The position numbers and the translations under genes were made by a program. 64,000 nucleotides of DNA from Auanema rhodensis (Eukaryota; Animalia; Nematoda): the NCBI GenBank assembly GCA_964057225.1, contig OZ059894.1, forward strand, positions 11,222,001 through 11,286,000, given 5' to 3'. This document shows, piece after piece, positions 1 to 43,689 of the stretch (positions are counted from its first letter, which is position 1; each line of letters begins with the position of its first letter). Under the pieces are notes generated by a model. It made no database searches. It had not been told where the DNA came from and saw nothing but the letters and a program-made list of their open reading frames with translations.

Positions 1-208
1 TTGTTAACCAAGACGTCTGAAAATAAAATTTTCTATTACAATAAATATGAAGTTCTATCATACATATGCATGTTATAAAGACTTTCTAGACGTATTTCAA
101 CGGGTTAGAACGAGTTTAAACCGAGTTATGAGGAAAAACAATGATATTTAAAAAAAAAACAACTATGTGTTGAAAAAATTTCTCTCTTGATTGGACTTTT
201 TACTGTTG

Positions 209-235
209 ATATATATATATATATATATATATATA
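209..235. repeat. (TA)n microsatellite ~145 bp upstream of the first 5S in every unit; variable length
   Basis: Also near 7910, 16856, 18990, 25741, 36058, 38534, 45021, 46713, 53182, 55681, 62223. Confidence 0.9.
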
Positions 236-380
236 AACGGATACATGGCTAACCTTTAGACACATAGGTGAAAAAAAAATTTTTTTTGTTATTGTTACTG
301 TTCCTGTTGTTTTCTTTGTGGTCGTATCTATTAACAACAAGATTTAGAGTGATATAACTGATAATGAAGAATATGACATT

Positions 381-499
381 GCTTACGACCATACCACGTT
401 GAAAGTACGCCATCCCGTCCGATCTGGCAAGTCAAGCAACGTTGGGCCCGGTTAGTACTTGGATCGGAGACGGCTTGGGAATCCCGGGTATCGTAAGCT
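381..499 (+). rRNA. 5S: 5S rRNA (G>A variant at 490)
   Basis: GCTTACGACC...GTAAGCT, internal control region AGTCAAGC/TTAGTACTTGGAT, followed by a T-run. Confidence 0.95.
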
Positions 500-740
500 T
501 TTATATTTTATTTGAAATTTTTTGAAGAAATAAAAAAGCTTTGATAACTAAAAAAAAGTTGTTGTTAATCGAATGTTTGCTCTAATAACACGACAGAGGT
601 AGTCTTAGATACTGTAAATAACTCGAACACTGTAAAGTTTGGGCATTTCATTTGTTACTGTTCCTGTTGTTTTCTTTGTGGTCCTAACTATTAACAACAA
701 GATTTAGAGTGATATAACTGATAATGAAGAATATAACATT

Positions 741-859
741 GCTTACGACCATACCACGTTGAAAGTACGCCATCCCGTCCGATCTGGCAAGTCAAGCAAC
801 GTTGGGCCCGGTTAGTACTTGGATCGGAGACGGCTTGGGAATCCCGGGTGTCGTAAGCT
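741..859 (+). rRNA. 5S: 5S rRNA
   Basis: 119 nt 5S with complementary ends and TTTT terminator. Confidence 0.96.
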
Positions 860-1238
860 TTTATATTTTATTTGAAATATCTTGAAGAAATAAAAAAGCT
901 TTGATAACTAGAAAAAGTTGTTGATTGATATGTGCTCTAATATTACAAGAGTGGTTGTTCTAGATACTGTAAGCAATACAAACACTGTAAAGTTGGGAGA
1001 TTTCATTGTATTAACCTTCTCCTAATTATTGTATAAAAATATATAAAATATTCGGAAACTTTGCAACCGTACATATAAAACTATATACAAGTATTTGAAT
1101 AAAAAGAATAGAAAAAAGTGCAGCGCTTCGAATAAGAAAAAAATAAGTCCAAAAGTTGAGTAAATCCACAGTTTATATGAGCCATTTATGACCTGTACAG
1201 TCAAGATTGTCAAACCACACTTTTATATTCAAATGAGA

Positions 1239-1261
1239 GAGTGCACTCGTAACAAGTACGA
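1239..1261 (+). promoter_or_regulatory. Candidate U2 proximal sequence element
   Basis: Position only (-63 to -41); contains palindrome GAGTGCACTC and TCGTA-N5-TACGA; no consensus match recognised. Confidence 0.3.
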
Positions 1262-1301
1262 TACATTTGCTTGATGTCTTTGATACTCATGGCTATGCTG
1301 T

Positions 1302-1397
1302 ATCGCTTCTCGGCCTTTTGGCTAAGATCAAAGTGTAGTAATCGTTCTTATCGAATTAACCTTCGATATGTGTTCCATTGGTTCACAATAAGGTTAA
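1302..1397 (+). pseudogene. U2: U2 nt 1-96 (element 5' leader / disrupted U2 5' part)
   Basis: Identical to U2 up to AAGGTTAA, then diverges before the Sm site. Also at 12745-12807(-, nt 34-96), 20588-20682, 27753-27848, 31558-31616 (nt 38-96), 60162-60257(-). Confidence 0.93.
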
Positions 1398-1449
1398 TGG
1401 CTAAATCGATATTGCAACTGTACTACGTAAGTCTTTAGATCTGCTAGAG

Positions 1450-4400
1450 ATGGAGCAAGGGCTTTACAAGCTAAAGGTGCCTCTTCAGAGCCCTTTTTCT
1501 TGTTCAATCTGCGCTCCTATTCCGCGATCCTACTCAGACCACAATGGTCTCGTCCGCCATCTTCGGAGAGAACATGAGGTCGGAGTAGAATTTGAGTGCC
1601 GTGCCTGTGGCCTCACCAGCAATCTGAAGGCCGTTAAAAGCCATCAGAAAAAAGCTGAAGGATGCCTCCGCATCATAGAGGAAACTGTGGTGATCTCACC
1701 TCTATCTCCGAGAGAGCCCAGTTCCCGCCCTATATTGCGGAGGATCAGGAACACCCGCCCACCAGGCACAAGGACGACCACCCCGCCCGTGGAGGAGCGT
1801 ACAATGGAGGAAACATCATCCAGTGGACAGGAACAAGGATCTCCATCAACGGTACGCTTATTTGAGGCCCCAATTCTGGACTTGTCCCCAGAGGCCGAAG
1901 TTTCCCCCCTTCCGCGAGAGAGTGAAATATTCAACGAGATCAGGGTTCCGAGTACAGAACCATCTTTTGCCGACCCTGATCCGAATAGAAACTCTGAAAA
2001 CATTTGGGTGGATAGAATTAAAAAGGTAGTGTGCAAAAGTGAGCTCGAGCAGGTCCTGGAAGAGTTGGTAGACACAATCAGAAAGTCTCTTGACATTATG
2101 ATCAAAGTTCCCAACTTCCGACAAAGGCGCCGACCACACACACAACCTGAGGAAGACCAAAAAACCCAGGCGATGAAGATCCAGAAGCTTTGGAGGGCCA
2201 ACAAGAAGAAAGCCTTTCGACAACTGCTCGGAGAACAAAGTGAAACCTGCACCATACCATCTGCAGATGTTGAAAAACACTTCCTTTCTGTTCACAGCAG
2301 TCAAGGCCCAGCCCTCCCCATCACAGTCACCAGACCGGATTTGCCAACTAGTACCGACCCATTAGAAGGTGTTTTCACCCCTTTGGAAGTCTGGGAACGC
2401 ATACGACGTTGCAGCGATACGGCTCCAGGAGCTGATGGACTTCGATACTCGCACTGGAAGAAATTTGACCAAGGAGGTCACATATTAGCAGCGATATTTA
2501 ACACCGTACACAAGCTAGGACACATCCCTTTTTCCTGGAAAGAGTCGACCACCGTCCTCATCCATAAGAAAGGTGATAAAGCTGACATTAACAACTGGCG
2601 ACCAATAGCACTTTCGTGCACAATTGGTAAGACGTACTCAGCTTGTCTTACGCATCGACTGCTAACATGGGCAAGAGCAGAAAAAAGACTTTCTCCCTCC
2701 CAAAAGGGCTTTGTGGCCAAAGCTGGATGCATGGAACACAACTTTTTGTTGCAAAGTACCATTGCAGACGCTAAACGTAAACGTGAGAAAATTGCAATTG
2801 CTTGGCTTGATCTCGCAAACGCTTTTGGATCGCTGCCACACGAAACTCTGCTAGACGTTCTAAGATGGTCAGGAATGGCTGAAGCCTCAATATCCCGAGT
2901 ACGAGCTCTATACACAGATGCCTCTACAAGAATCCAGACAGGCTCCGGACTCACTTCGACCATTCCAGTTCACGCAGGTGTGTTACAAGGATCCCCACTA
3001 TCTCCGATCCTGTTCAACCTTGCCATTGAACCTCTAATTAAAACCATCTTGGAAACCTCTACAGGCTATAAGCTACACAATCACAACATCGCTGTGCTAG
3101 CGTACGCCGATGACCTTGCCCTGGTCTCCTCATCATCAGAAGATCTACAGAAAATGTTGGACGCAGCATCAAATGCGGCTAATTTCACAGGCTTGACCTT
3201 CAAACCAGCGAAATGCGCCACTTTGACGATCGACAAAGGGAAAATATCAACAGCCTCATACATGCTTCAGAGCTGCTTTCTACCCGCTCTCAGCAAATTT
3301 GACAGCTACTCCCACCTGGGAATCCCTACTGGAATGCATTTACATAAGTCTGCGGTTCCAACAGTGAATATCATGAGTCAACACTTGGAAAAAATTGACA
3401 AATCCTTACTGGCTGAATGGCAGAAAGCTGACGCAGTACGCACCTTCCTGATGCCCTGCCTTAATTTTCATATGACGAATGGCCACGTCCCAAAGAGTAA
3501 ACTAGTCGCCTTTGACAAAGAACTCAAACGCTGTGCCCGTAGATGGATGCACTATCCTCCAAACGCCAGTGCTGAACCAATCTACCTGCCAACTAACTAC
3601 GGCGGACTTGGTCTCTCTCGACTCCAACACCTGTCAGACGTCTGTGAAGTCACTCATGCCTACCAACTTTTGAAGTCATCTGATCTTGTAGTAGCTGATA
3701 TTGCGCATCAAGACTCAATAAAAGTAGCATCAAAAAGGATTAAACGTCAAGCCAGTAACGATGAGACAGCTGCATATTACAACGGTTCCGTTGATGGCAT
3801 TTTCGACACCGAAACATCTGATGTTTCCTCCATCTGGACTAGAGTAAGAGTAGCGATGCGTCAACTCAAGAAACTCATCAACGCTAACTGGACATGCCTC
3901 GAAAGTGGTTTAGAACTCAATCTAAACAACCAACTGTTAACACCTTCACTATGCCACAGAAGCCTGCGACGTGCATTATGGCTGAAAGACCTTCGGATCC
4001 TTCTTCAAAAACCGGATCAAGGGAAAGTCTTTGATGTCACAATGCTCAACAAAGCGTCCAATCACTTTATGGCGAAGGGAGATTTCATACGGTTTGCTGA
4101 TTGGCGATTCATCCACAAGGCTCGACTTAATACTCTCCAGCTCAATGGCTGTAGAAGACACGGAGAAGGAAACAAACAGTGCCGCAGGTGTAGTTACCCC
4201 AACGAAACTGCTGCACATGTTCTTGGACACTGCCACTTTCACACGAGAGCAATCCAACTCCGCCACAACAACATCGTGGACCGTCTTATCAAAGCCCTGC
4301 CAGAGCCTAAAAACGGAGAAGTTTACACTAACCAGCCTCTTCCTGGCATTAATAGTACACTCCGACCTGACATAGTAGTGGTCGATCATGACGCAAAACA

Positions 4401-4728
4401 CTGTAGTATCGTTGATGTTACAGTGAGCTATGAAAACCGCCGACAAGCCATGATAGCCGCGCGTATGATAAAGGAGAGGAAATATGCTGACATAGCCAGC
4501 CAATACCAATGTCTTGGTTATAAGACTAGTGTAGAAGCGTATGTCGTAGGAATGCTTGGAACTATGGACCCGCTCAACGTACAAGCCCTCCGATCACTCA
4601 AGATCAGCAGCCACTACAACCGGCTAATGGAGAAGCTCGTCGTCGCCGATACCATCAAGTGGGCCAGGAATATCTACGTGGAACATGTTTCTGGTGTAAG
4701 GCAGTATGAAGAAGAAATTATCCATTGA
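1450..4728 (+). CDS. ZnF-RT-CCHC-RLE polyprotein, 1092 aa, intact
   Basis: C2H2 CSIC..H....H and CRAC..H..C fingers; RT motifs APGADG, WRPIAL, QKGF, WLDLANAFGS, GVLQGSPLSP, YADD; WRFIHKARLN; CRRC..ETAAHVLGHC knuckle; RHN and RPD..VDVT..E..K..KY endonuclease motifs. Confidence 0.97.
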   Translation: MEQGLYKLKVPLQSPFSCSICAPIPRSYSDHNGLVRHLRREHEVGVEFECRACGLTSNLKAVKSHQKKAEGCLRIIEETVVISPLSPREPSSRPILRRIRNTRPPGTRTTTPPVEERTMEETSSSGQEQGSPSTVRLFEAPILDLSPEAEVSPLPRESEIFNEIRVPSTEPSFADPDPNRNSENIWVDRIKKVVCKSELEQVLEELVDTIRKSLDIMIKVPNFRQRRRPHTQPEEDQKTQAMKIQKLWRANKKKAFRQLLGEQSETCTIPSADVEKHFLSVHSSQGPALPITVTRPDLPTSTDPLEGVFTPLEVWERIRRCSDTAPGADGLRYSHWKKFDQGGHILAAIFNTVHKLGHIPFSWKESTTVLIHKKGDKADINNWRPIALSCTIGKTYSACLTHRLLTWARAEKRLSPSQKGFVAKAGCMEHNFLLQSTIADAKRKREKIAIAWLDLANAFGSLPHETLLDVLRWSGMAEASISRVRALYTDASTRIQTGSGLTSTIPVHAGVLQGSPLSPILFNLAIEPLIKTILETSTGYKLHNHNIAVLAYADDLALVSSSSEDLQKMLDAASNAANFTGLTFKPAKCATLTIDKGKISTASYMLQSCFLPALSKFDSYSHLGIPTGMHLHKSAVPTVNIMSQHLEKIDKSLLAEWQKADAVRTFLMPCLNFHMTNGHVPKSKLVAFDKELKRCARRWMHYPPNASAEPIYLPTNYGGLGLSRLQHLSDVCEVTHAYQLLKSSDLVVADIAHQDSIKVASKRIKRQASNDETAAYYNGSVDGIFDTETSDVSSIWTRVRVAMRQLKKLINANWTCLESGLELNLNNQLLTPSLCHRSLRRALWLKDLRILLQKPDQGKVFDVTMLNKASNHFMAKGDFIRFADWRFIHKARLNTLQLNGCRRHGEGNKQCRRCSYPNETAAHVLGHCHFHTRAIQLRHNNIVDRLIKALPEPKNGEVYTNQPLPGINSTLRPDIVVVDHDAKHCSIVDVTVSYENRRQAMIAARMIKERKYADIASQYQCLGYKTSVEAYVVGMLGTMDPLNVQALRSLKISSHYNRLMEKLVVADTIKWARNIYVEHVSGVRQYEEEIIH

Positions 4729-5114
4729 CTTGTTTGTGATTTGATTGTAATATATTTTTTACTTTTTGTATTACTTATTTTTGTCTTTTTTCTTTCTCTC
4801 TTTCTGACCTTCATTGGTACATGTATTTTGTTGTTTATTTTTAACACCATTGCCGTAGGCACTCAAATTGTTTGATCATAGCGGCACTTGATATTTACTT
4901 TTCACTGTTCTGCTTTATTATTCATTTTTTTTGTTATTCATTACTTTTTTTAACCCACTCCCCCGACTCTTGAGTCGTTTTAGCCTCTGTTGGTAATGTG
5001 TTTTATTTTGTACTTTTTAATCACTTGCTGTTTTAAGTTGTACTGGTAATACCGTCTCCCCGATTCTGGGCTCTTTTTTATTGGTTATTTATTGTTTCAT
5101 AACATTAGTTATTC

Positions 5115-5120
5115 AATAAA
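5115..5120 (+). promoter_or_regulatory. AATAAA 4 nt before the element 3' end
   Basis: Present in all 11 copies; no poly(A) follows. Confidence 0.5.
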
Positions 5121-5124
5121 CCAT

Positions 5125-5271
5125 TAATCGTTCTTATCGAATTAACCTTCGATATGTGTTCCATTGGTTCACAATAAGGTTAACCGATTTTTGAGACTTG
5201 AGGTAGATGCTGGCTTGCTAGCTCCACCTCACGGGTCGACCCGCTCTTGCACTGCTGGCGGGAACGGCCCA
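5125..5271 (+). pseudogene. U2: U2 nt 38-184 downstream of insertion
   Basis: Begins TAATCGTTCTT directly after the element end. Confidence 0.93.
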
Positions 5272-5635
5272 ATTTATTTATTTTTATTTTTTATTTTTTT
5301 TTTTTATTAAGAACAATTTATTGACGTAGAGAATGTTTGTTCCGAAAAACTACAATATTAAACTATAAAAGTAACAAAAGCGTAGAGGCAGCAAAGACAT
5401 GAATAAACATAAATGTAAATACAGAATTACCAGGTAGTACATAAGTATGACAAAAAATTATAAGAAAGCCATGAAAATAGAAGGTTTGTGAACAAATGAG
5501 AGGTACATCTTTGATCGTATAGTCATTTCTAAACCGTTCGTATGCTGCAGCATCGTCATAAGCGTCACTCAAGTTGAATTTCCATGTGTACTACACGATT
5601 TTCATTCTTATTGTTACATTCTTTCCCTGAGGGAA

Positions 5636-12500: not shown

Positions 12501-12807
12501 GCTTTTAACGGCCTTCAGATTGCTGGTGAGGCCACAGGCACGGCACTCAAATTCTACTCCGACCTCATGTTCTCTCCGAAGATGGCGGACGAGACCATTG
12601 TGGTCTGAGTAGGATCGCGGAATAGGAGCGCAGATTGAACAAGAAAAAGGGCTCTGAAGAGGCACCTTTAGCTTGTAAAGCCCTTGCTCCATCTCTAGCA
12701 GATCTAAAGACTTACGTAGTACAGTTGCAATATCGATTTAGCCATTAACCTTATTGTGAACCAATGGAACACATATCGAAGGTTAATTCGATAAGAACGA
12801 TTACTAC
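9544..12807 (-). mobile_element. Copy 3: element with a 526 bp internal deletion and leader clipped to U2 nt 34-96
   Basis: ATG at 12692; deletion junction at 10647-10649 on AAG microhomology; leader 12745-12807. Confidence 0.93.
9940..12692 (-). pseudogene. Frameshifted ORF (RT core intact, RLE out of frame)
   Basis: 799 aa ORF leaves the native frame after NGHVPK; RLE remains as a separate frame 9940-10626. Confidence 0.9.
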
Positions 12808-20287: not shown

Positions 20288-20587
20288 TTCCCTCAGGGAA
20301 AGAATGTAACAATAAGAATGAAAATCGTGTAGTACACATGGAAATTCAACTTGAGTGACGCTTATGACGATGCTGCAGCATACGAACGGTTTAGAAATGA
20401 CTATACGATCAAAGATGTACCTCTCATTTGTTCACAAACCTTCTATTTTCATGGCTTTCTTATAATTTTTTGTCATACTTATGTACTACCTGGTAATTCT
20501 GTATTTACATTTATGTTTATTCATGTCTTTGCTGCCTCTACGCTTTTGTTACTTTTATAGTTTAATATTGTAGTTTTTTTTTTTTTT

Positions 20588-23500
20588 TCGCTTCTCGGCC
20601 TTTTGGCTAAGATCAAAGTGTAGTAATCGTTCTTATCGAATTAACCTTCGATATGTGTTCCATTGGTTCACAATAAGGTTAATGGCTAAATCGATATTGC
20701 AACTGTACTACGTAAGTCTTTAGATCTGCTAGAGATGGAGCAAGGGCTTTACAAGCTAAAGGTGCCTCTTCAGAGCCCTTTTTCTTGTTCAATCTGCGCT
20801 CCTATTCCGCGATCCTACTCAGACCACAATGGTCTCGTCCGCCATCTTCGGAGAGAACATGAGGTCGGAGTAGAATTTGAGTGCCGTGCCTGTGGCCTCA
20901 CCAGCAATCTGAAGGCCGTTAAAAGCCATCAGAAAAAAGCTGAAGGATGCCTCCGCATCATAGAGGAAACTGTGGTGATCTCACCTCTATCTCCGAGAGA
21001 GCCCAGTTCCCGCCCTATATTGCGGAGGATCAGGAACACCCGCCCACCAGGCACAAGGACGACCACCCCGCCCGTGGAGGAGCGTACAATGGAGGAAACA
21101 TCATCCAGTGGACAGGAACAAGGATCTCCATCAACGGTACGCTTGTTTGAGGCCCCAATTCTGGACTTGTCCCCAGAGGCCGAAGTTTCCCCCCTTCCGC
21201 GAGAGAGTGAAATATTCAACGAGATCAGGGTTCCGAGTACAGAACCATCTTTTGCCGACCCTGATCCGAATAGAAACTCTGAAAATATTTGGGTGGATAG
21301 AATTAAAAAGGTAGTGTGCAAAAGTGAGCTCGAGCAGGTCCTGGAAGAGTTGATAGACACAATCAGAAAGTCTCTTGACATTATGATCAAAGTTCCCAAC
21401 TTCCGACAAAGGCGCCGACCACACACACAACCTGAGGAAGACCAAAAAACCCAGGCGATGAAGATCCAGAAGCTTTGGAGGGCCAACAAGAAGAAAGCCT
21501 TTCGACAACTGCTCGGAGAACAAAGTGAAACCTGCACCATACCATCTGCAGATGTTGAAAAACACTTCCTTTCTGTTCACAGCAGTCAAGGCCCAGCCCT
21601 CCCCATCACAGTCACCAGACCGGATTTGCCAACTAGTACCGACCCATTAGAAGGTGTTTTCACCCCTTTGGAAGTCTGGGAACGCATACGACGTTGCAGC
21701 GATACGGCTCCAGGAGCTGATGGACTTCGATACTCGCACTGGAAGAAATTTGACCAAGGAGGTCACATATTAGCAGCGATATTTAACACCGTACACAAGC
21801 TAGGACACATCCCTTTTTCCTGGAAAGAGTCGACCACCGTCCTCATCCATAAGAAAGGTGATAAAGCTGACATTAACAACTGGCGACCAATAGCACTTTC
21901 GTGCACAATTGGTAAGACGTACTCAGCTTGTCTTACGCATCGACTGCTAACATGGGCAAGAGCAGAAAAAAGACTTTCTCCCTCCCAAAAGGGCTTTGTG
22001 GCCAAAGCTGGATGCATGGAACACAACTTTTTGTTGCAAAGTACCATTGCAGACGCTAAACGTAAACGTGAGAAAATTGCAATTGCTTGGCTTGATCTCG
22101 CAAACGCTTTTGGATCGCTGCCACACGAAACTCTGCTAGACGTTCTAAGATGGTCAGGAATGGCTGAAGCCTCAATATCCCGAGTACGAGCTCTATACAC
22201 AGATGCCTCTACAAGAATCCAGACAGGCTCCGGACTCACTTCGACCATTCCAGTTCACGCAGGTGTGTTACAAGGATCCCCACTATCTCCGATCCTGTTC
22301 AACCTTGCCATTGAACCTCTAATTAAAACCATCTTGGAAACCTCTACAGGCTATAAGCTACACAATCACAACATCGCTGTGCTAGCGTACGCCGATGACC
22401 TTGCCCTGGTCTCCTCATCATCAGAAGATCTACAGAAAATGTTGGACGCAGCATCAAATGCGGCTAATTTCACAGGCTTGACCTTCAAACCAGCGAAATG
22501 CGCCACTTTGACGATCGACAAAGGGAAAATATCAACAGCCTCATACATGCTTCAGAGCTGCTTTCTACCCGCTCTCAGCAAATTTGACAGCTACTCCCAC
22601 CTGGGAATCCCTACTGGAATGCATTTACATAAGTCTGCGGTTCCAACAGTGAATATCATGAGTCAACACTTGGAAAAAATTGACAAATCCTTACTGGCTG
22701 AATGGCAGAAAGCTGACGCAGTACGCACCTTCCTGATGCCCTGCCTTAATTTTCATATGACGAATGGCCACGTCCCAAAGAGTAAACTAGTCGCCTTTGA
22801 CAAAGAACTCAAACGCTGTGCCCGTAGATGGATGCACTATCCTCCAAACGCCAGTGCTGAACCAATCTACCTGCCAACTAACTACGGCGGACTTGGTCTC
22901 TCTCGACTCCAACACCTGTCAGACGTCTGTGAAGTCACTCATGCCTACCAACTTTTGAAGTCATCTGATCTTGTAGTAGCTGATATTGCGCATCAAGACT
23001 CAATAAAAGTAGCATCAAAAAGGATTAAACGTCAAGCCAGTAACGATGAGACAGCTGCATATTACAACGGTTCCGTTGATGGCATTTTCGACACCGAAAC
23101 ATCTGATGTTTCCTCCATCTGGACTAGAGTAAGAGTAGCGATGCGTCAACTCAAGAAACTCATCAACGCTAACTGGACATGCCTCGAAAGTGGTTTAGAA
23201 CTCAATCTAAACAACCAACTGTTAACACCTTCACTATGCCACAGAAGCCTGCGACGTGCATTATGGCTGAAAGACCTTCGGATCCTTCTTCAAAAACCGG
23301 ATCAAGGGAAAGTCTTTGATGTCACAATGCTCAACAAAGCGTCCAATCACTTTATGGCGAAGGGAGATTTCATACGGTTTGCTGATTGGCGATTCATCCA
23401 CAAGGCTCGACTTAATACTCTCCAGCTCAATGGCTGTAGAAGACACGGAGAAGGAAACAAACAGTGCCGCAGGTGTAGTTACTCCAACGAAACTGCTGCA

Positions 23501-24409
23501 CATGTTCTTGGACACTGCCACTCTCACACGAGAGCAATCCAACTCCGCCACAACAACATCGTGGACCGTCTTATCAAAGCCCTGCCAGAGCCTAAAAACG
23601 GAGAAGTTTACACTAACCAGCCTCTTCCTGGCATTAATAGTACACTCCGACCTGACATAGTAGTGGTCGATCATGACGCAAAACACTGTAGTATCGTTGA
23701 TGTTACAGTGAGCTATGAAAACCGCCGTCAAGCCATGATAGCCGCGCGTATGATAAAGGAGAGGAAATATGCTGACATAGCCAGCCAATACCAATGTCTT
23801 GGTTATAAGACTAGTGTAGAAGCATATGTCGTAGGAATGCTTGGAACTATGGACCCGCTCAACGTACAAGCCCTCCGATCACTCAAGATCAGCAGCCACT
23901 ACAACCGGCTAATGGAGAAGCTCGTCGTCGCCGATACCATCAAGTGGGCCAGGAATATCTACGTGGAACATGTTTCTGGTGTAAGGCAATATGAAGAAGA
24001 AATTATCCATTGACTTGTTTGTGATTTGATTGTAATATATTTTTTACTTTTTGTATTACTTATTTTTGTCTTTTTTCTTTCTCTCTTTCTGACCTTCATT
24101 GGTACATGTATTTTGTTTTTTATTTTTAACACTATTGCCGTAGGCACTCAAATTGTTTGATCATAGCGGCACTTGATATTTACTTTTCACTGTTCTGCTT
24201 TATTATTCATTTTTTTTGTTATTCATTACTTTTTTTAACCCACTCCCCCGACTCTTGAGTCGTTTTAGCCTCTGTTGGTAATGTGTTTTATTTTGTACTT
24301 TTTAATCACTTGCTGTTTTAAGTTGTACTGGTAATACCGTCTCCCCGATTCTGGGCTCTTTTTTATTGGTTATTTATTGTTTCATAACATTAGTTATTCA
24401 ATAAACCAT
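20588..24409 (+). mobile_element. Copy 5: full-length element with U2 nt 2-96 leader, not preceded by the U2 promoter region
   Basis: Spacer ...GTAG(T)15 then CGCTTCTCGG; element-specific sequence from 20683; U2 nt 38 at 24410. Confidence 0.95.
20735..24013 (+). CDS. ZnF-RT-CCHC-RLE polyprotein, 1092 aa, intact
   Basis: Same motifs as copy 1; 3 aa differences seen. Confidence 0.96.
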   Translation: MEQGLYKLKVPLQSPFSCSICAPIPRSYSDHNGLVRHLRREHEVGVEFECRACGLTSNLKAVKSHQKKAEGCLRIIEETVVISPLSPREPSSRPILRRIRNTRPPGTRTTTPPVEERTMEETSSSGQEQGSPSTVRLFEAPILDLSPEAEVSPLPRESEIFNEIRVPSTEPSFADPDPNRNSENIWVDRIKKVVCKSELEQVLEELIDTIRKSLDIMIKVPNFRQRRRPHTQPEEDQKTQAMKIQKLWRANKKKAFRQLLGEQSETCTIPSADVEKHFLSVHSSQGPALPITVTRPDLPTSTDPLEGVFTPLEVWERIRRCSDTAPGADGLRYSHWKKFDQGGHILAAIFNTVHKLGHIPFSWKESTTVLIHKKGDKADINNWRPIALSCTIGKTYSACLTHRLLTWARAEKRLSPSQKGFVAKAGCMEHNFLLQSTIADAKRKREKIAIAWLDLANAFGSLPHETLLDVLRWSGMAEASISRVRALYTDASTRIQTGSGLTSTIPVHAGVLQGSPLSPILFNLAIEPLIKTILETSTGYKLHNHNIAVLAYADDLALVSSSSEDLQKMLDAASNAANFTGLTFKPAKCATLTIDKGKISTASYMLQSCFLPALSKFDSYSHLGIPTGMHLHKSAVPTVNIMSQHLEKIDKSLLAEWQKADAVRTFLMPCLNFHMTNGHVPKSKLVAFDKELKRCARRWMHYPPNASAEPIYLPTNYGGLGLSRLQHLSDVCEVTHAYQLLKSSDLVVADIAHQDSIKVASKRIKRQASNDETAAYYNGSVDGIFDTETSDVSSIWTRVRVAMRQLKKLINANWTCLESGLELNLNNQLLTPSLCHRSLRRALWLKDLRILLQKPDQGKVFDVTMLNKASNHFMAKGDFIRFADWRFIHKARLNTLQLNGCRRHGEGNKQCRRCSYSNETAAHVLGHCHSHTRAIQLRHNNIVDRLIKALPEPKNGEVYTNQPLPGINSTLRPDIVVVDHDAKHCSIVDVTVSYENRRQAMIAARMIKERKYADIASQYQCLGYKTSVEAYVVGMLGTMDPLNVQALRSLKISSHYNRLMEKLVVADTIKWARNIYVEHVSGVRQYEEEIIH

Positions 24410-27752: not shown

Positions 27753-30700
27753 ATCGCTTCTCGGCCTTTTGGCTAAGATCAAAGTGTAGTAATCGTTCTT
27801 ATCGAATTAACCTTCGATATGTGTTCCATTGGTTCACAATAAGGTTAATGGCTAAATCGATATTGCAACTGTACTACGTAAGTCTTTAGATCTGCTAGAG
27901 ATGGAGCAAGGGCTTTACAAGCTAAAGGTGCCTCTTCAGAGCCCTTTTTCTTGTTCAATCTGCGCTCCTATTCCGCGATCCTACTCAGACCACAATGGTC
28001 TCGTCCGCCATCTTCGGAGAGAACATGAGGTCGGAGTAGAATTTGAGTGCCGTGCCTGTGGCCTCACCAGCAATCTGAAGGCCGTTAAAAGCCATCAGAA
28101 AAAAGCTGAAGGATGCCTCCGCATCATAGAGGAAACTGTGGTGATCTCACCTCTATCTCCGAGAGAGCCCAGTTCCCGCCCTATATTGCGGAGGATCAGG
28201 AACACCCGCCCACCAGGCACAAGGACGACCACCCCGCCCGTGGAGGAGCGTACAATGGAGGAAACATCATCCAGTGGACAGGAACAAGGATCTCCATCAA
28301 CGGTACGCTTGTTTGAGGCCCCAATTCTGGACTTGTCCCCAGAGGCCGAAGTTTCCCCCCTTCCGCGAGAGAGTGAAATATTCAACGAGATCAGGGTTTC
28401 GAGTACAGAACCATTTTTTGCCGACCCTGATCCGAATAGAAACTCTGAAAATACTTGGGTGGATAGAATTAAAAAGGTTGTGTGCAAAAGTGAGCTCGAG
28501 CAGGTCCTGGAAGAGTTGGTAGACGCAATCAGAAAGTCTCTTGACATTATGATCAAAGTTCCCAACTTCCGACAAAGGCGCCGACCACACACACAACCTG
28601 AGGAAGACCAAAAAACCCAGGCGATGAAGCTCCAGAAGCTCTGGAGGGCCAACAAGAAGAAAGCCTTTCGACAACTGCTCGGAGAACAAAGTGAAACCTG
28701 CACCATACCATCTGCAGAGGTTGAAAAACATTTCCTTTCTGTTCACAGCAGTCAAGGCCCAGCCCTCCCCATCACAGTCACCAGACCGGATTTGCCAGCT
28801 AGTACCGACCCATTAGAAGGTGTTTTCACCCCTTTGGAAGTCTGGGAACGCATACGACGTTGCAGCGATACGGCTCCAGGAGCTGATGGACTTCGATACT
28901 CGCACTGGAAGAAATTTGACCAAGGAGGTCACATATTAGCAGCGATATTTAACACCGTACACAAGCTAGGACACATCCCTTTTTCCTGGAAAGAGTCGAC
29001 CACCGTCCTCATCCATAAGAAAGGTGATAAAGCTGACATTAACAACTGGCGACCAATAGCACTTTCGTGCACAATTGGTAAGACGTACTCAGCTTGTCTT
29101 ACGCATCGACTGCTAACATGGGCAAGAGCAGAAAAAAGACTTTCTCCCTCCCAAAAGGGCTTTGTGGCCAAAGCTGGATGCATGGAACACAACTTTATGT
29201 TGCAAAGTACCATTGCGGACGCTAAACGTAAACGTGAGAAAATTGCAATTGCTTGGCTTGATCTCGCAAACGCTTTTGGATCGCTGCCACACGAAACTCT
29301 GCTAGACGTTCTAAGATGGTCAGGAGTGGCTGAAGCCTCAATATCCCGAGTACGAGCTCTATACACAGATGCCTCTACAAGAATCCAGACAGGCTCCGGA
29401 CTCACATCGACCATTCCAGTTCATGCAGGTGTGTTACAAGGATCCCCACTATCTCCGATCCTGTTCAACCTTGCCATTGAACCTCTAATTAAAACCATCT
29501 TGGAATCCTCTACTGGCTATAAGCTACACAATCACAACATCGCTGTGCTAGCGTACGCCGATGACCTTGCCCTGGTCTCCTCATCATCAGAAGATCTACA
29601 GAAAATGTTGGACGCAGCATCAAATGCGGCTAATTTCACAGGCTTGACCTTCAAACCAGCGAAATGCGCCACCTTGACGATCGACAAAGGGAAAATATCA
29701 ACAGCCTCATACATGCTACAGAGCTCCTCTCTACCCGCTCTCAGCAAATTCGACAGCTACTCCCACCTGGGAATCCCTACTGGAATGCATTTACATAAGT
29801 CTGCGGTTCCAACAGTGAATATTATGAGTCAACACTTGGAAAAAATTGACAAATCCTTACTTGCTGAATGGCAGAAAGCTGACGCAGTACGCACCTTCCT
29901 GATGCCCTGCCTTAATTTTCATATGACGAATGGCCACGTCCCAAAGAGTAAACTAGTCGCCTTTGACAAAGAACTCAAACGCTGTGCCCGTAGATGGATG
30001 CACTATCCTCCAAACGCCAGTGCTGAACCAATCTACCTGCCAACTAACTACGGCGGACTTGGTCTCTCTCGACTCCAACACCTGTCAGACGTCTGTGAAG
30101 TCACTCATGCCTACCAACTTTTGAAGTCATCTGATCTTGTAGTAGCTGATATTGCGCATCAAGACTCAAAAAAAGTAGCATCAAAAAGGATTAAACGTCA
30201 AGCCAGTAACGATGAGACAGCTGCATATTACAACGGTTCCGTTGATGGCATTTTCGACACCGAAACATCTGATGTTTCCTCCATCTGGACTAGAGTAAGA
30301 GTAGCGATGCGTCAACTCAAGAAACTCATCAACGCTAACTGGACATGCCTCGAAAGTGGTTTAGAACTCAATCTAAACAACCAACTGTTAACACCTTCAC
30401 TATGCCACAGAAGCCTGCGACGGGCATTATGGCTGAAAGACCTTCGGATCCTTCTTCAAAAACCGGATCAAGGGAAAGTCTTTGATGTCACAATGCTCAA
30501 CAAAGCGTCCAATCACTTTATGGCGAAGGGAGATTTCATACGGTTTGCTGATTGGCGATTCATCCACAAGGCTCGACTCAATACTCTCCAGCTCAATGGC
30601 TGTAGAAGACACGGAGAAGGAAACAAACAGTGCCGCAGGTGTAGTTACTCCAACGAAACTGCTGCACATGTTCTTGGACACTGCCACTCTCACACGAGAG

Positions 30701-31557
30701 CAATCCAACTCCGCCACAACAACATCGTGGACCGTCTTATCAAAGCCCTGCCAGAGCCTAAAAACGGAGAAGTTTACACTAACCAGCCTCTTCCTGGCAT
30801 TAATAGTACACTCCGACCTGACATAGTAGTGGTCGATCATGACGCAAAACACTGTAGTATCGTTGATGTTACAGTGAGCTATGAAAACCGCCGTCAAGCC
30901 ATGATAGCCGCGCGTATGATAAAGGAGAGGAAATATGCTGACATAGCCAGCCAATACCAATGTCTTGGTTATAAGACTAGTGTAGAAGCATATGTCGTAG
31001 GAATGCTTGGAACTATGGACCCGCTCAACGGACAAGCCCTCCGATCACTCAAGATCAGCAGCCACTACAACCGGCTAATGGAGAAGCTCGTCGTCGCCGA
31101 TACCATCAAGTGGGCCAGGAATATCTACGTGGAACATGTTTCTGGTGTAAGGCAATATGAAGAAGAAATTATCAATTGACTTGTTTGTGATTTGATTGTA
31201 ATGTATTTACTTTTTGTATTACTTATTTTTGTCTTTTGTTTCTTTCTTTCTGACCTTCATTGGTACATGTATTTTGTTGTTTATTTTTAACATCATTGCC
31301 GTAGGCACTCAAATTGTTTGATCATAGCGGCACTTGATTTCTCATTGTTCTGCTTTAATATTCATTTTTTTGTTCATTTTTTTTAACCCACTCCCCCGAC
31401 TCTTGAGTCGTTTTAGCCTCTGTTGGCAATGTGTCTTATTATGTACTTTTTAATTACTTGCTGTTTTAAGTTGTACTGGTAATACCGTCTCCCCGATTCT
31501 GGGCTCTTTTTTATTGGTTATTTATTGTATCATAACATTAGTTATTCAATAAACCAT
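27753..31557 (+). mobile_element. Copy 6: full-length element (variant B) with U2 nt 1-96 leader joined to spacer
   Basis: Spacer CGGGAC[AT]CGCTTC junction; element-specific sequence from 27849; followed by U2 nt 38-96 and copy 7. Confidence 0.95.
27901..31179 (+). CDS. ZnF-RT-CCHC-RLE polyprotein, 1092 aa, intact (variant B)
   Basis: All catalytic motifs intact; substitutions such as VSSTEPFF, HNFM, EIIN. Confidence 0.96.
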   Translation: MEQGLYKLKVPLQSPFSCSICAPIPRSYSDHNGLVRHLRREHEVGVEFECRACGLTSNLKAVKSHQKKAEGCLRIIEETVVISPLSPREPSSRPILRRIRNTRPPGTRTTTPPVEERTMEETSSSGQEQGSPSTVRLFEAPILDLSPEAEVSPLPRESEIFNEIRVSSTEPFFADPDPNRNSENTWVDRIKKVVCKSELEQVLEELVDAIRKSLDIMIKVPNFRQRRRPHTQPEEDQKTQAMKLQKLWRANKKKAFRQLLGEQSETCTIPSAEVEKHFLSVHSSQGPALPITVTRPDLPASTDPLEGVFTPLEVWERIRRCSDTAPGADGLRYSHWKKFDQGGHILAAIFNTVHKLGHIPFSWKESTTVLIHKKGDKADINNWRPIALSCTIGKTYSACLTHRLLTWARAEKRLSPSQKGFVAKAGCMEHNFMLQSTIADAKRKREKIAIAWLDLANAFGSLPHETLLDVLRWSGVAEASISRVRALYTDASTRIQTGSGLTSTIPVHAGVLQGSPLSPILFNLAIEPLIKTILESSTGYKLHNHNIAVLAYADDLALVSSSSEDLQKMLDAASNAANFTGLTFKPAKCATLTIDKGKISTASYMLQSSSLPALSKFDSYSHLGIPTGMHLHKSAVPTVNIMSQHLEKIDKSLLAEWQKADAVRTFLMPCLNFHMTNGHVPKSKLVAFDKELKRCARRWMHYPPNASAEPIYLPTNYGGLGLSRLQHLSDVCEVTHAYQLLKSSDLVVADIAHQDSKKVASKRIKRQASNDETAAYYNGSVDGIFDTETSDVSSIWTRVRVAMRQLKKLINANWTCLESGLELNLNNQLLTPSLCHRSLRRALWLKDLRILLQKPDQGKVFDVTMLNKASNHFMAKGDFIRFADWRFIHKARLNTLQLNGCRRHGEGNKQCRRCSYSNETAAHVLGHCHSHTRAIQLRHNNIVDRLIKALPEPKNGEVYTNQPLPGINSTLRPDIVVVDHDAKHCSIVDVTVSYENRRQAMIAARMIKERKYADIASQYQCLGYKTSVEAYVVGMLGTMDPLNGQALRSLKISSHYNRLMEKLVVADTIKWARNIYVEHVSGVRQYEEEIIN

Positions 31558-34500
31558 TAATCGTTCTTATCGAATTAACCTTCGATATGTGTTCCATTGG
31601 TTCACAATAAGGTTAATGGCTAAATCGATATTGCAACTGTACTACGTAAGTCTTTAGATCTGCTAGAGATGGAGCAAGGGCTTTACAAGCTAAAGGTGCC
31701 TCTTCAGAGCCCTTTTTCTTGTTCAATCTGCGCTCCTATTCCGCGATCCTACTCAGACCACAATGGTCTCGTCCGCCATCTTCGGAGAGAACATGAGGTC
31801 GGAGTAGAATTTGAGTGCCGTGCCTGTGGCCTCACCAGCAATCTGAAGGCCGTTAAAAGCCATCAGAAAAAAGCTGAAGGATGCCTCCGCATCATAGAGG
31901 AAACTGTGGTGATCTCACCTCTATCTCCGAGAGAGCCCAGTTCCCGCCCTATATTGCGGAGGATCAGGAACACCCGCCCACCAGGCACAAGGACGACCAC
32001 CCCGCCCGTGGAGGAGCGTACAATGGAGGAAACATCATCCAGTGGACAGGAACAAGGATCTCCATCAACGGTACGCTTGTTTGAGGCCCCAATTCTGGAC
32101 TTGTCCCCAGAGGCCGAAGTTTCCCCCCTTCCGCGAGAGAGTGAAATATTCAACGAGATCAGGGTTTCGAGTACAGAACCATTTTTTGCCGACCCTGATC
32201 CGAATAGAAACTCTGAAAATACTTGGGTGGATAGAATTAAAAAGGTTGTGTGCAAAAGTGAGCTCGAGCAGGTCCTGGAAGAGTTGGTAGACGCAATCAG
32301 AAAGTCTCTTGACATTATGATCAAAGTTCCCAACTTCCGACAAAGGCGCCGACCACACACACAACCTGAGGAAGACCAAAAAACCCAGGCGATGAAGCTC
32401 CAGAAGCTCTGGAGGGCCAACAAGAAGAAAGCCTTTCGACAACTGCTCGGAGAACAAAGTGAAACCTGCACCATACCATCTGCAGAGGTTGAAAAACATT
32501 TCCTTTCTGTTCACAGCAGTCAAGGCCCAGCCCTCCCCATCACAGTCACCAGACCGGATTTGCCAGCTAGTACCGACCCATTAGAAGGTGTTTTCACCCC
32601 TTTGGAAGTCTGGGAACGCATACGACGTTGCAGCGATACGGCTCCAGGAGCTGATGGACTTCGATACTCGCACTGGAAGAAATTTGACCAAGGAGGTCAC
32701 ATATTAGCAGCGATATTTAACACCGTACACAAGCTAGGACACATCCCTTTTTCCTGGAAAGAGTCGACCACCGTCCTCATCCATAAGAAAGGTGATAAAG
32801 CTGACATTAACAACTGGCGACCAATAGCACTTTCGTGCACAATTGGTAAGACGTACTCAGCTTGTCTTACGCATCGACTGCTAACATGGGCAAGAGCAGA
32901 AAAAAGACTTTCTCCCTCCCAAAAGGGCTTTGTGGCCAAAGCTGGATGCATGGAACACAACTTTATGTTGCAAAGTACCATTGCGGACGCTAAACGTAAA
33001 CGTGAGAAAATTGCAATTGCTTGGCTTGATCTCGCAAACGCTTTTGGATCGCTGCCACACGAAACTCTGCTAGACGTTCTAAGATGGTCAGGAGTGGCTG
33101 AAGCCTCAATATCCCGAGTACGAGCTCTATACACAGATGCCTCTACAAGAATCCAGACAGGCTCCGGACTCACATCGACCATTCCAGTTCATGCAGGTGT
33201 GTTACAAGGATCCCCACTATCTCCGATCCTGTTCAACCTTGCCATTGAACCTCTAATTAAAACCATCTTGGAATCCTCTACTGGCTATAAGCTACACAAT
33301 CACAACATCGCTGTGCTAGCGTACGCCGATGACCTTGCCCTGGTCTCCTCATCATCAGAAGATCTACAGAAAATGTTGGACGCAGCATCAAATGCGGCTA
33401 ATTTCACAGGCTTGACCTTCAAACCAGCGAAATGCGCCACCTTGACGATCGACAAAGGGAAAATATCAACAGCCTCATACATGCTACAGAGCTCCTCTCT
33501 ACCCGCTCTCAGCAAATTCGACAGCTACTCCCACCTGGGAATCCCTACTGGAATGCATTTACATAAGTCTGCGGTTCCAACAGTGAATATTATGAGTCAA
33601 CACTTGGAAAAAATTGACAAATCCTTACTTGCTGAATGGCAGAAAGCTGACGCAGTACGCACCTTCCTGATGCCCTGCCTTAATTTTCATATGACGAATG
33701 GCCACGTCCCAAAGAGTAAACTAGTCGCCTTTGACAAAGAACTCAAACGCTGTGCCCGTAGATGGATGCACTATCCTCCAAACGCCAGTGCTGAACCAAT
33801 CTACCTGCCAACTAACTACGGCGGACTTGGTCTCTCTCGACTCCAACACCTGTCAGACGTCTGTGAAGTCACTCATGCCTACCAACTTTTGAAGTCATCT
33901 GATCTTGTAGTAGCTGATATTGCGCATCAAGACTCAAAAAAAGTAGCATCAAAAAGGATTAAACGTCAAGCCAGTAACGATGAGACAGCTGCATATTACA
34001 ACGGTTCCGTTGATGGCATTTTCGACACCGAAACATCTGATGTTTCCTCCATCTGGACTAGAGTAAGAGTAGCGATGCGTCAACTCAAGAAACTCATCAA
34101 CGCTAACTGGACATGCCTCGAAAGTGGTTTAGAACTCAATCTAAACAACCAACTGTTAACACCTTCACTATGCCACAGAAGCCTGCGACGGGCATTATGG
34201 CTGAAAGACCTTCGGATCCTTCTTCAAAAACCGGATCAAGGGAAAGTCTTTGATGTCACAATGCTCAACAAAGCGTCCAATCACTTTATGGCGAAGGGAG
34301 ATTTCATACGGTTTGCTGATTGGCGATTCATCCACAAGGCTCGACTTGTTTGTGATTTGATTGTAATATATTTTTTACTTTTTGTATTACTTATTTTTGT
34401 CTTTTGTTTCTTTCTTTCTGACCTTCATTGGTACATGTATTTTGTTGTTTATTTTTAACATCATTGCCGTAGGCACTCAAATTGTTTGATCATAGCGGCA

Positions 34501-34725
34501 CTTGATTTCTCATTGTTCTGCTTTAATATTCATTTTTTTGTTCATTTTTTTTAACCCACTCCCCCGACTCTTGAGTCGTTTTAGCCTCTGTTGGCAATGT
34601 GTCTTATTATGTACTTTTTAATTACTTGCTGTTTTAAGTTGTACTGGTAATACCGTCTCCCCGATTCTGGGCTCTTTTTTATTGGTTATTTATTGTATCA
34701 TAACATTAGTTATTCAATAAACCAT
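31558..34725 (+). mobile_element. Copy 7: tandem variant-B element lacking the endonuclease (603 bp deletion)
   Basis: U2 nt 38-96 at 31558-31616; deletion at GACTT 34343-34347; standard 3' junction at 34726. Confidence 0.94.
31669..34458 (+). CDS. ZnF-RT protein without knuckle/RLE, 929 aa, tail read from the 3'UTR (possibly non-functional)
   Basis: Open from native ATG to FIHKARL, then VCDLIVIYFLLFVLL... Confidence 0.75.
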   Translation: MEQGLYKLKVPLQSPFSCSICAPIPRSYSDHNGLVRHLRREHEVGVEFECRACGLTSNLKAVKSHQKKAEGCLRIIEETVVISPLSPREPSSRPILRRIRNTRPPGTRTTTPPVEERTMEETSSSGQEQGSPSTVRLFEAPILDLSPEAEVSPLPRESEIFNEIRVSSTEPFFADPDPNRNSENTWVDRIKKVVCKSELEQVLEELVDAIRKSLDIMIKVPNFRQRRRPHTQPEEDQKTQAMKLQKLWRANKKKAFRQLLGEQSETCTIPSAEVEKHFLSVHSSQGPALPITVTRPDLPASTDPLEGVFTPLEVWERIRRCSDTAPGADGLRYSHWKKFDQGGHILAAIFNTVHKLGHIPFSWKESTTVLIHKKGDKADINNWRPIALSCTIGKTYSACLTHRLLTWARAEKRLSPSQKGFVAKAGCMEHNFMLQSTIADAKRKREKIAIAWLDLANAFGSLPHETLLDVLRWSGVAEASISRVRALYTDASTRIQTGSGLTSTIPVHAGVLQGSPLSPILFNLAIEPLIKTILESSTGYKLHNHNIAVLAYADDLALVSSSSEDLQKMLDAASNAANFTGLTFKPAKCATLTIDKGKISTASYMLQSSSLPALSKFDSYSHLGIPTGMHLHKSAVPTVNIMSQHLEKIDKSLLAEWQKADAVRTFLMPCLNFHMTNGHVPKSKLVAFDKELKRCARRWMHYPPNASAEPIYLPTNYGGLGLSRLQHLSDVCEVTHAYQLLKSSDLVVADIAHQDSKKVASKRIKRQASNDETAAYYNGSVDGIFDTETSDVSSIWTRVRVAMRQLKKLINANWTCLESGLELNLNNQLLTPSLCHRSLRRALWLKDLRILLQKPDQGKVFDVTMLNKASNHFMAKGDFIRFADWRFIHKARLVCDLIVIYFLLFVLLIFVFCFFLSDLHWYMYFVVYF

Positions 34726-43100: not shown

Positions 43101-43296
43101 AGAAGCGTATGTCGTAGGAATGCTTGGAACTATGGACCCGCTCAACGGACAAGCCCTTCGATCACTCAAGATCAGCAGCCACTACAACCGGCTAATGGAG
43201 AAGCTCGTCGTCGCCGATACCATCAAGTGGGCCAGGAATATCTACGTGGAACATGTTTCTGGTGTAAGCCAGTATGAAGAAGAAATTATCCATTGA
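40188..43296 (+). pseudogene. ORF lacking ATG and zinc fingers; RT and RLE in frame (first in-frame ATG 40372)
   Basis: 1013 aa open frame in ORF track. Confidence 0.85.
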
Positions 43297-43689
43297 CTTG
43301 TTTGTGATTCGATTGTAATGTATTTACTTTTTGTATTACTTATTTTTGTCTTTTTTTCTTTCTTTCTGACCTTCATTGGTACATGTATTTTGTTGTTTAT
43401 TTTTAACACCATTGCCGTAGGCACTCAAATTGTCTGATCATAGCGGTACTTGATATTTAATTTTCATTGTTCTGCTTTAGTATTCATTTTTTTTTTTTGT
43501 TATTCATTACTTTTTTAACCCACTCCCCCGACTCTTGAGTTGTTTTAGCCCCTGTTGGTAATCTGTCTTATTATGTACTTTTTAATCACTTGCTGTTTGA
43601 AGTTGTACTGGTAAGACCGTCTCCCCGGTTCTGGGCTCTTTCTTATTGGTTAGTTATTGTATCATAACATTAGTTATTCAATAAACCAT
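40188..43689 (+). mobile_element. Copy 8: slightly 5'-truncated element (variant C)
   Basis: Starts at copy-1 position 1620 via CAAT microhomology inside the degenerate U2 fragment; U2 nt 38 at 43690. Confidence 0.94.

What the first reader, a model, noticed from the sequence alone, without database searches (positions are those of the whole stretch)
1302..1449. Element has adopted U2 nt 1-96 as its 5' leader, cut just before the Sm site
Seen: what looks like a 59 bp TSD (U2 nt 38-96) is invariant. Copies 5, 6 and 10 begin at U2 nt 1-2 although they are joined to unrelated spacer, so the U2 piece travels with the element and the template began at U2 +1. The leader keeps stem I, the branch-pairing region and IIa/IIb/IIc, ends on the last base of the IIc strand (AAGGTTAA), and omits GATTTTTGA. 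Inference: promoter-linked copies (only copy 1 here) are transcribed from the U2 promoter as a capped U2-chimeric RNA that avoids Sm assembly and cap hypermethylation, so no internal promoter or 5' ribozyme is needed.
Basis: partly seen in the sequence, partly recalled or inferred. Interest (0 to 1): 0.85.

Follow-up and report, generated by a model that had tools for sequence, protein, structure and literature searches.

The report
U2-headed Utopia retrotransposon transcript footprint
A jumping gene that lives inside U2 snRNA genes carries the first 96 bases of U2 on its own RNA, which shows that it is copied from a transcript started by the host U2 promoter; this is a neat variant of a strategy already known from R2 and SLACS elements.

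Summary
The window is a 5S-5S-U2 tandem array carrying about ten copies of a 3727-bp Utopia-type retrotransposon with a restriction-like endonuclease (RLE). Every 3' end abuts U2 nt 38. Every copy that reaches element nt 1 is preceded by U2 ending at nt 96. Two independent copies, from two subfamilies, start at U2 nt 1-3 but are fused to array spacer, one through an oligo-T filler and one through 2-nt microhomology.

Best reading: the transposition template starts at the U2 transcription start and is not trimmed. U2 1-96 is therefore part of the RNA. The invariant 59-bp duplication is probably a frozen junction propagated by homology-guided 5' joining, as proposed for R2 elements whose RNA keeps upstream 28S sequence. 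No ribozyme was detected, and the 5' UTR is only 52 nt.

The Sm-avoidance and cap claims are untested, and I could not test them. Relatives end their U2 part near nt 54-59, so the endpoint does not look tuned to the Sm site.

Other windows of this genome carry similar unchecked first-reader notes. Verdict: new variant of a known kind.

The parts
1..1301 (+). Normal array sequence upstream of a U2 gene: spacer, two 5S rRNA genes (381-499, 741-859) and the U2 promoter region
   Evidence: 98.2% match to unit positions 1161-2482; the last 80 nt are identical to those upstream of the intact U2 at 17622; 5S hits
1302..1397 (+). U2 nt 1-96: promoter-linked leader of copy 1. It holds stem I, the branch-point recognition region and stems IIa/IIb/IIc, and ends 2 nt before the Sm site
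   Evidence: 100% identity to intact U2; Rfam U2, 84 bits
1398..1449 (+). 52-nt element 5' UTR. An AUG straddles the junction at 1397. Also present: UACUAC at 1421, GUAAGU at 1427, and CUUUAG ending at 1438
1450..4728 (+). Intact ORF of 1092 aa: two N-terminal zinc fingers, reverse transcriptase, CCHC finger and a PD..D..K restriction-like endonuclease
   Evidence: closest solved structures are R2 proteins, E 3.6e-67
4729..5124 (+). 3' UTR with AATAAA at 5115-5120, 4 nt before the 3' junction
5125..5271 (+). Downstream target remnant, U2 nt 38-184, including the Sm site
20579..20587 (+). Nine extra T between spacer (unit position 475) and the U2 nt 2 start of copy 5: untemplated filler
   Evidence: compared with the canonical unit
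20588..24409 (+). Copy 5: U2 nt 2-96 leader (to 20682) plus a full-length element with an intact 1092-aa ORF, lying 295 bp downstream of an intact U2
27753..31557 (+). Copy 6: U2 nt 1-96 leader (to 27848) fused to spacer position 899-901 by 2-nt microhomology, plus a full-length element with an intact ORF
31558..31616 (+). U2 nt 38-96 linker between two head-to-tail elements
31617..34725 (+). Second element of the tandem, with an internal deletion of nt 2732-3329
   Evidence: 99.97% identical to copy 6
60162..60257 (-). Mirror copy of the 27753 leader on the other arm of the inverted duplication; not an independent event
12745..12807 (-). Leader truncated at U2 nt 34 (nt 34-96), joined head-to-head to a 5'-truncated element
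40188..43689 (+). 5'-truncated copy (from element nt 223) joined to spacer position 532 by 7-nt overlap, not to U2 nt 96

Best explanation
This is a young, active family of Utopia, the RLE non-LTR retrotransposons that target U2 snRNA genes. It has no promoter of its own.

Transcription (inferred from genomic footprints). A copy inserted canonically, as promoter-U2(1-96)-element-U2(38-190), is transcribed by the host U2 promoter from U2 +1. The 5' end of that RNA is not trimmed, so U2 nt 1-96 is a fixed leader of the transposition template.

First strand (inferred by analogy with R2). Target-primed reverse transcription starts at a bottom-strand nick between U2 nt 37 and 38.

5' joining at a U2 target (inferred). 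When the cDNA reaches the RNA 5' end, its terminal complement of U2 1-96 anneals to the same sequence in the target. This gives the uniform promoter-U2(1-96)-element junction. On this view the 59-bp duplication (38-96) is a junction variant frozen in the RNA and propagated. It need not be made afresh by a staggered cut at each insertion.

5' joining when annealing fails (shown by the junction anatomy). The cDNA end is joined by microhomology or untemplated bases to a top-strand end several hundred bp downstream. This leaves a complete U2(1-96) head on unrelated spacer and a 438-864-bp target duplication.
For: - 3' junction fixed at U2 nt 38 in 11/11 copies; 5' junction U2 nt 96 | element nt 1 in 6/6.
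- Two independent copies, from subfamilies about 1.3% apart, begin at U2 nt 2 and nt 1-3 on spacer, with a T9 filler and a 2-nt microhomology. Chance is about 1e-5.
- Both flanks of the 27753-34725 insertion share the only two SNPs seen in unit positions 38-901 among 17 copies. This fits an 864-bp target duplication.
- All three junctions made without leader homology (20588, 27753, and the 5'-truncated 40188) use spacer ends at unit positions 475, 901 and 532, never U2 nt 96.
- No ribozyme or other Rfam family at E<=5 in 1150-5450; the 5' UTR is only 52 nt.
- The protein is R2-like with RT, CCHC and PD..D..K motifs. Loci of its relatives have U2 from about nt 38 at their 3' ends.
- Precedents: SLACS transcription starts at +1 of the interrupted SL RNA gene (PMC3447711). 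R2 templates that keep upstream 28S sequence give uniform 5' junctions and propagate aberrant junctions, including a 22-bp downstream-28S duplication in earwig (PMC3774820).
Against: - There is no RNA evidence.
- Only two independent +1 junctions were verified here.
- Related families L003 and L004, both only distantly related to this element (43% and 42% protein identity to it), share the same upstream endpoint near U2 nt 58-59. This looks more like a real, conserved staggered cut, so a true cut at 96/97 in this family cannot be excluded.
- From general knowledge of vertebrate snRNA genes, snRNA-type promoters are poor at making long or polyadenylated RNAs.
- The leader adds two upstream ORFs before the main AUG.
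- The array contains several inverted junctions that may be assembly artefacts.
Confidence: 0.7

Rival explanations
1. Real 59-bp target-site duplication. The endonuclease nicks the top strand between U2 nt 96 and 97 at every insertion. The RNA still starts at U2 +1, but the leader merely matches what the staggered cut would produce anyway.
For: Kojima and Jurka read the 20-bp duplications of reptile Utopia as staggered cleavage (PMC4640811). Relatives L003 and L004, each only 42-43% identical to this element in protein, share one endpoint near nt 58-59.
Against: The three junctions formed without leader homology use spacer positions 475, 532 and 901, never nt 96. The one simple 5'-truncated copy is not flanked by U2 1-96. 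An unchecked note reports a different endpoint (nt 79) for another family in the same genome.
Confidence: 0.3
2. The leader endpoint was selected to fall just before the Sm site, so that the chimeric RNA keeps an m7G cap, escapes snRNP assembly and behaves as an mRNA.
For: The leader ends 2 nt before the Sm site. No known family's upstream U2 includes the Sm site. A conserved AATAAA 4-11 nt before the 3' junction, in this and related families, could end the RNA before the downstream Sm site.
Against: Endpoints differ among families (about nt 37, 54-59, 96), so any junction upstream of nt 99 satisfies the condition trivially. Nothing about cap state or Sm binding was measured. If the host is a nematode, as gene names in other notes hint, trimethylguanosine-capped mRNAs are translated normally there (general knowledge), which removes the need.
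Confidence: 0.2
3. The upstream U2 is only target DNA. The RNA starts at or near element nt 1 from an internal promoter, and the U2(+1)-spacer junctions are later deletions or rearrangements of canonical insertions.
For: The array is heavily rearranged, with inversions, an internal deletion and a large inverted duplication.
Against: This needs two independent rearrangements ending within 3 nt of U2 +1, about 1e-5 by chance. The T9 filler and microhomology are typical of reverse-transcriptase 5' joining. No copy starts at element nt 1 without U2.
Confidence: 0.07
4. Template-switch chimeras. [quoted passage not shown]
For: U2 snRNA is abundant, and snRNA-headed retrocopies exist (SINEU, PMC4494074).
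Against: A jump would enter U2 at its 3' end and give variable joints. Here the joint is always U2 nt 96 | element nt 1, and the promoter-linked copy 1 has the same joint.
Confidence: 0.03

Closest known systems
Utopia (U2 snRNA gene-specific RLE non-LTR retrotransposons; Kojima and Jurka 2015, PMC4640811)
   Same: Single ORF with zinc fingers, RT and a restriction-like endonuclease. The 3' junction is precise at U2 nt 38/39. Elements occur in tandem. Upstream of some insertions lies an intact U2 rather than a U2 5' fragment, as reported for Phytophthora.
   Different: The U2 duplication is 59 bp, against none in arthropod families and 20 bp in reptile families. The host array is 5S-U2. That paper does not discuss promoters, transcription or the template 5' end. 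The U2 +1 footprints are new for this clade.
SLACS/CZAR/CRE elements in trypanosomatid spliced-leader RNA genes
   Same: RLE non-LTR elements inside a Pol II small-RNA gene, with transcription reported to initiate at +1 of the interrupted host gene (PMC3447711). From memory, SLACS also has a long (49-bp) target duplication.
   Different: A different clade and a different target. They carry poly-A tails (PMC12278014). Only 11 nt of host RNA precede the element (from memory). The evidence there is transcript mapping; here it is genomic footprints.
R2 elements whose ribozyme cleaves upstream in 28S rRNA (Eickbush et al. 2013, PMC3774820)
   Same: The element is co-transcribed with the host gene and host sequence is retained on the template 5' end. 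Uniform 5' junctions arise by cDNA/target heteroduplex. Aberrant junctions are propagated, including a 22-bp duplication of downstream 28S in earwig. Rare junctions carry duplicated upstream host sequence of a length that marks the RNA 5' end.
   Different: R2 is transcribed by Pol I, and its 5' end is set by an HDV-like ribozyme. Here the 5' end is the host gene's own Pol II start site, no ribozyme is detected, and the host leader is 96 nt long.
SINEU, crocodilian SINEs with U1- or U2-derived heads (Kojima 2015, PMC4494074)
   Same: A retroposon whose 5' head is snRNA sequence that lacks an internal promoter. Dependence on upstream promoters is discussed there.
   Different: SINEU is short and non-coding, is mobilised in trans, does not target U2, and its head is thought to come from template switching or from retroposed snRNA.

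Membership tests
Utopia | Non-LTR element encoding RT plus a C-terminal CCHC finger and a PD-(D/E)xK restriction-like endonuclease, with no APE domain | tested here: met
   Pfam RVT_1, E 5e-28, and no endonuclease/exonuclease/phosphatase domain. The CRRC...H...C finger and the RPDIVV...DVTV...K motif were read in the C-terminus. Best solved relatives are R2 proteins.
Utopia | 3' end joined to U2 snRNA genes at the conserved site (U2 resumes at nt 38/39) | tested here: met
   11 of 11 3' junctions are at U2 nt 38.
Utopia | RT groups with Utopia families in a phylogeny | not tested
Indirect support: the closest proteins (40-56% identity) include loci flanked by U2 at the same site (L003-L005) and taxa listed for Utopia (turtles, Daphnia, insects, sponges).
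Utopia | No R2-type Myb domain (criterion used in PMC13188248) | tested here: met
   No Myb family in the Pfam scan at E<=0.01. This is a weak test, because short Myb domains can be missed.
R2-type co-transcribed element | 5' HDV-like self-cleaving ribozyme that frees the element from the host transcript | tested here: not met
   No Rfam family other than U2 at E<=5 in 1150-5450. The 52-nt 5' UTR is too short for one.
R2-type co-transcribed element | Host sequence on the template 5' end guides a uniform 5' junction | tested here: inconclusive
   The junction is uniform (6/6) and the leader is clearly template-borne. The annealing step itself is inferred.
Host-promoter-driven small-RNA-gene retrotransposon (SLACS-like behaviour) | Transcripts start at +1 of the interrupted host gene | not testable with these tools
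   Only genomic footprints are available.

The most novel reading that the evidence does not exclude
An snRNA-type Pol II promoter (U2) drives a 3.8-kb protein-coding chimeric RNA that leaves the snRNP pathway. The Sm site is excluded from the 5' leader. A conserved AAUAAA just before the 3' junction ends the RNA before the downstream Sm site. The same molecule would then serve as both mRNA and transposition template. This would be a natural exception to the view that snRNA promoters do not make mRNAs.
Probability: 0.2. Interest if true: 0.75.

Novelty: new variant of a known kind. Interest (0 to 1): 0.55.

Why it matters
How Utopia elements are expressed has not been described. These junctions give a sequence-level footprint of the template's 5' end, the U2 start site. 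They place Utopia with R2 and SLACS as elements that borrow the host gene's promoter.

They also suggest that the long target duplications of some site-specific elements are inherited parts of the RNA rather than products of each integration. This affects how cleavage sites are inferred from genome data, and it is relevant to engineering R2-like proteins for targeted insertion.

Finally, the system offers a natural case for asking whether an snRNA promoter can support a long coding transcript.

Tried and rejected
RNA evidence:
- The look-up of sequencing runs gave only three 20-million-letter runs holding 6-7% of the element's words.
No reads were laid.

Ribozyme or other structured RNA in the leader and UTR: none at E<=5. 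Folding of 1302-1460 is only modestly better than shuffles, z = -2.2.

Relatives:
- The closest relative's contig, L001 (55% identity), has no U2 at either end and its 3' end is incomplete.
- L002 has no U2.
- Two other contigs had no retrievable DNA.
- In the scorpion locus L003 I looked for an analogous U2 +1 junction. The locus is too rearranged and too short to judge.

Other attempts:
- A findings search for 5'-truncated copies found nothing.
- Template switching and post-insertion deletion were considered and rejected on junction anatomy.
- Deletion versus duplication for the aberrant insertions cannot be settled in a periodic array. Shared private SNPs favour duplication for one of them.

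Full report
What is there

The window is a tandem array with a 2482-bp unit. Each unit holds one 190-nt U2 snRNA gene and two 5S rRNA genes (Rfam; unit mapping). Into it are inserted about ten copies of a 3727-bp element.

The element has one 1092-aa ORF (1450-4728 in copy 1). The ORF encodes two N-terminal zinc fingers, a reverse transcriptase (Pfam RVT_1), a CCHC finger and a PD..D..K restriction-like endonuclease motif. Its nearest solved relatives are R2 proteins (E 3.6e-67).

Its nearest database relatives are 40-56% identical, from soil metagenomes, nematodes, a scorpion, turtles, Daphnia and insects. The loci of three of them carry U2 sequence resuming at about nt 38 at the element's 3' end.

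This is a Utopia-type element as defined by Kojima and Jurka (PMC4640811). Three copies in the window have intact ORFs. Copies fall into three subfamilies 1.3-1.9% apart. The family is therefore young and probably active.

Checking the observation

- 1302-1397 is identical to U2 nt 1-96 and is preceded by the genuine upstream unit.
- All 11 3' junctions are element end | U2 nt 38.
- All six occurrences of element nt 1 are preceded by U2 ending at nt 96.
- One junction (31558-31616) is a bare U2 38-96 linker between two head-to-tail elements.
- The leader ends in AAGGTTAA (nt 89-96), the exact complement of nt 55-62. It is followed by CC and then the Sm site GATTTTTGA.

The copy at 20588 begins at U2 nt 2. 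It follows spacer position 475 of the preceding unit plus nine extra T. The copy at 27753 begins at U2 nt 1, after spacer position 899-901, with a 2-nt overlap.

The copy at 60257(-) has the same junction, but it lies on the other arm of a 99.9% identical inverted duplication. It is the same event.

With six non-canonical 5' ends in the non-mirrored part of the window, two landing within 3 nt of the first base of a 3823-nt template has a chance of about 1e-5.

What it means

The simplest account is that the RNA used for retrotransposition begins at the U2 transcription start, so it carries U2 1-96. The oligo-T filler and the microhomology are the usual marks of a reverse transcriptase reaching the end of its template, with the cDNA then joined without homology.

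Post-insertion deletions would have to end at U2 +1 twice. Template switching onto mature U2 snRNA would give variable joints and would enter at the U2 3' end. Neither fits the data.

The two aberrant insertions, and the one simple 5'-truncated copy (40188, from element nt 223), all follow an intact U2 plus 285-711 bp of spacer. In a periodic array this can be read as a 1.6-2.0-kb upstream deletion or as a 438-864-bp target duplication.

For the 27753 insertion, both flanks share the only two SNPs found in that stretch among 17 unit copies. This favours duplication. Earlier first-reader notes on this window made the same reading. I tested it for this one case.

Is the 59-bp repeat made at each insertion?

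All three junctions formed without leader homology use spacer ends at unit positions 475, 532 and 901, and none uses U2 nt 96. This gives no support to a regular top-strand nick at 96/97.

The R2 literature provides the model. When the template keeps upstream host sequence, the cDNA end anneals to the target and gives uniform junctions. Any aberrant junction then becomes part of the RNA and is propagated, including a 22-bp duplication of downstream 28S in all earwig R2 copies (PMC3774820). I think the 59 bp here is such a frozen junction, with roughly 60% confidence.

Against this, two relatives that are each only 42-43% identical to this element (the scorpion locus L003 and contig L004) share one endpoint near U2 nt 58-59, and L005 ends near nt 54. 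A conserved endpoint across such distant families looks like a conserved staggered cut. Kojima and Jurka read the reptile 20-bp duplications that way. The two views predict different flanks for 5'-truncated copies, and a genome-wide census would settle it.

A U2-promoter origin is supported, but only by genomic footprints. The absence of a ribozyme is consistent with a null Rfam scan at E<=5 and a 52-nt 5' UTR.

The claim that the endpoint is placed to avoid Sm assembly and cap hypermethylation is untested, and the data do not need it:
- Endpoints differ among families, and any endpoint upstream of nt 99 excludes the Sm site.
- The co-transcript could continue into the downstream U2 38-190, which has an Sm site.
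- The leader adds two short upstream ORFs, with AUGs at 1368 and 1397.

It recurs 8-11 nt before the junction in the related families. If it acts as a poly(A) signal, the RNA would end a few tens of nt into the downstream U2, before its Sm site. This is inference only.

RNA evidence

Only three very small runs hold any of the element.

Comparison with what is known

- Utopia is known, but its 2015 description does not discuss transcription or promoters. It reports 0-bp or 20-bp duplications, not 59 bp.
- Transcription from +1 of the interrupted host gene is reported for SLACS in the trypanosome SL RNA gene (PMC3447711).
- Host-sequence-guided 5' joining is the R2 model.

The finding is therefore a new variant of a known kind. 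The host gene's own start site, rather than a ribozyme, sets the template's 5' end, and the evidence for this is unusually clean at the DNA level.

Other first-reader notes report further U2 +1 junctions and a second family ending at nt 79 elsewhere in this genome. I could not check them, and they are not counted as support.

Noticed in passing
window 24014-45730 versus 64000-46046; junction at 46038-46046: There is a large inverted duplication, 99.94-99.95% identical over 14.2 and 6.6 kb. The arms meet asymmetrically (unit position 2391 against 2083) through a T8 filler. The right arm lacks one element of the tandem pair. It may be a real palindrome or an assembly fold-back.
   Followed up: partly
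window 18123-18185 and the same place in every unit (unit positions 502-564): Every spacer carries a degenerate copy of U2 nt 39-96, followed by a few bases resembling the element's 5' start (58 of 68 positions match, one 5-nt gap). It looks like a fossil of an old 38-96 linker or leader junction that has been homogenised through the array.
   Followed up: partly
window 26891-27754 and 34726-35589: The only two SNPs in unit positions 38-901 among 17 copies are shared by the two flanks of one insertion. This fits an 864-bp target duplication that leaves an intact U2 upstream.
   Followed up: yes
window 5115-5120; L003 about 3142, 9852, 14294; L004 about 5118; L005 about 4553: AATAAA lies 4-11 nt before the 3' junction in this family and in three related families. 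It may be a poly(A) signal or an RT-recognition feature.
   Followed up: partly
window 1421-1438: The 5' UTR holds UACUAC (complementary to the U2 branch-point recognition sequence), GUAAGU, and CUUUAG ending 11 nt before the AUG. The arrangement resembles a branch point plus 3' splice or trans-splice acceptor. If the host trans-splices, this could remove the leader and its upstream ORFs from the translated RNA.
   Followed up: no
window 5272-5307, 7270, 8390-8392, 12795-12807: Several inverted junctions lie inside the array. One is a head-to-head pair in which a leader truncated at U2 nt 34 overlaps by 13 nt an opposite-strand element starting at nt 998. Another has an AT-rich 36-bp filler.
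   Followed up: partly
window 31617-34725 (and mirror 60161-57053): This copy has an internal deletion of element nt 2732-3329. Its last 398 nt are only 93% identical to copy 1, although it is 99.97% identical to its tandem partner over the aligned part.
   Followed up: no
L003 3159-3178, 5589-5647, 14310-14329: In the scorpion Centruroides sculpturatus, related elements sit in tandem, separated by U2 nt 40-59. One copy is preceded by U2 nt 1-59. This is the same architecture with a 20-bp repeat.
   Followed up: partly
window 1398-1404: The first seven bases of the element repeat a heptamer from U2 stem-loop I. This may be a trace of an older U2-derived head.
   Followed up: no
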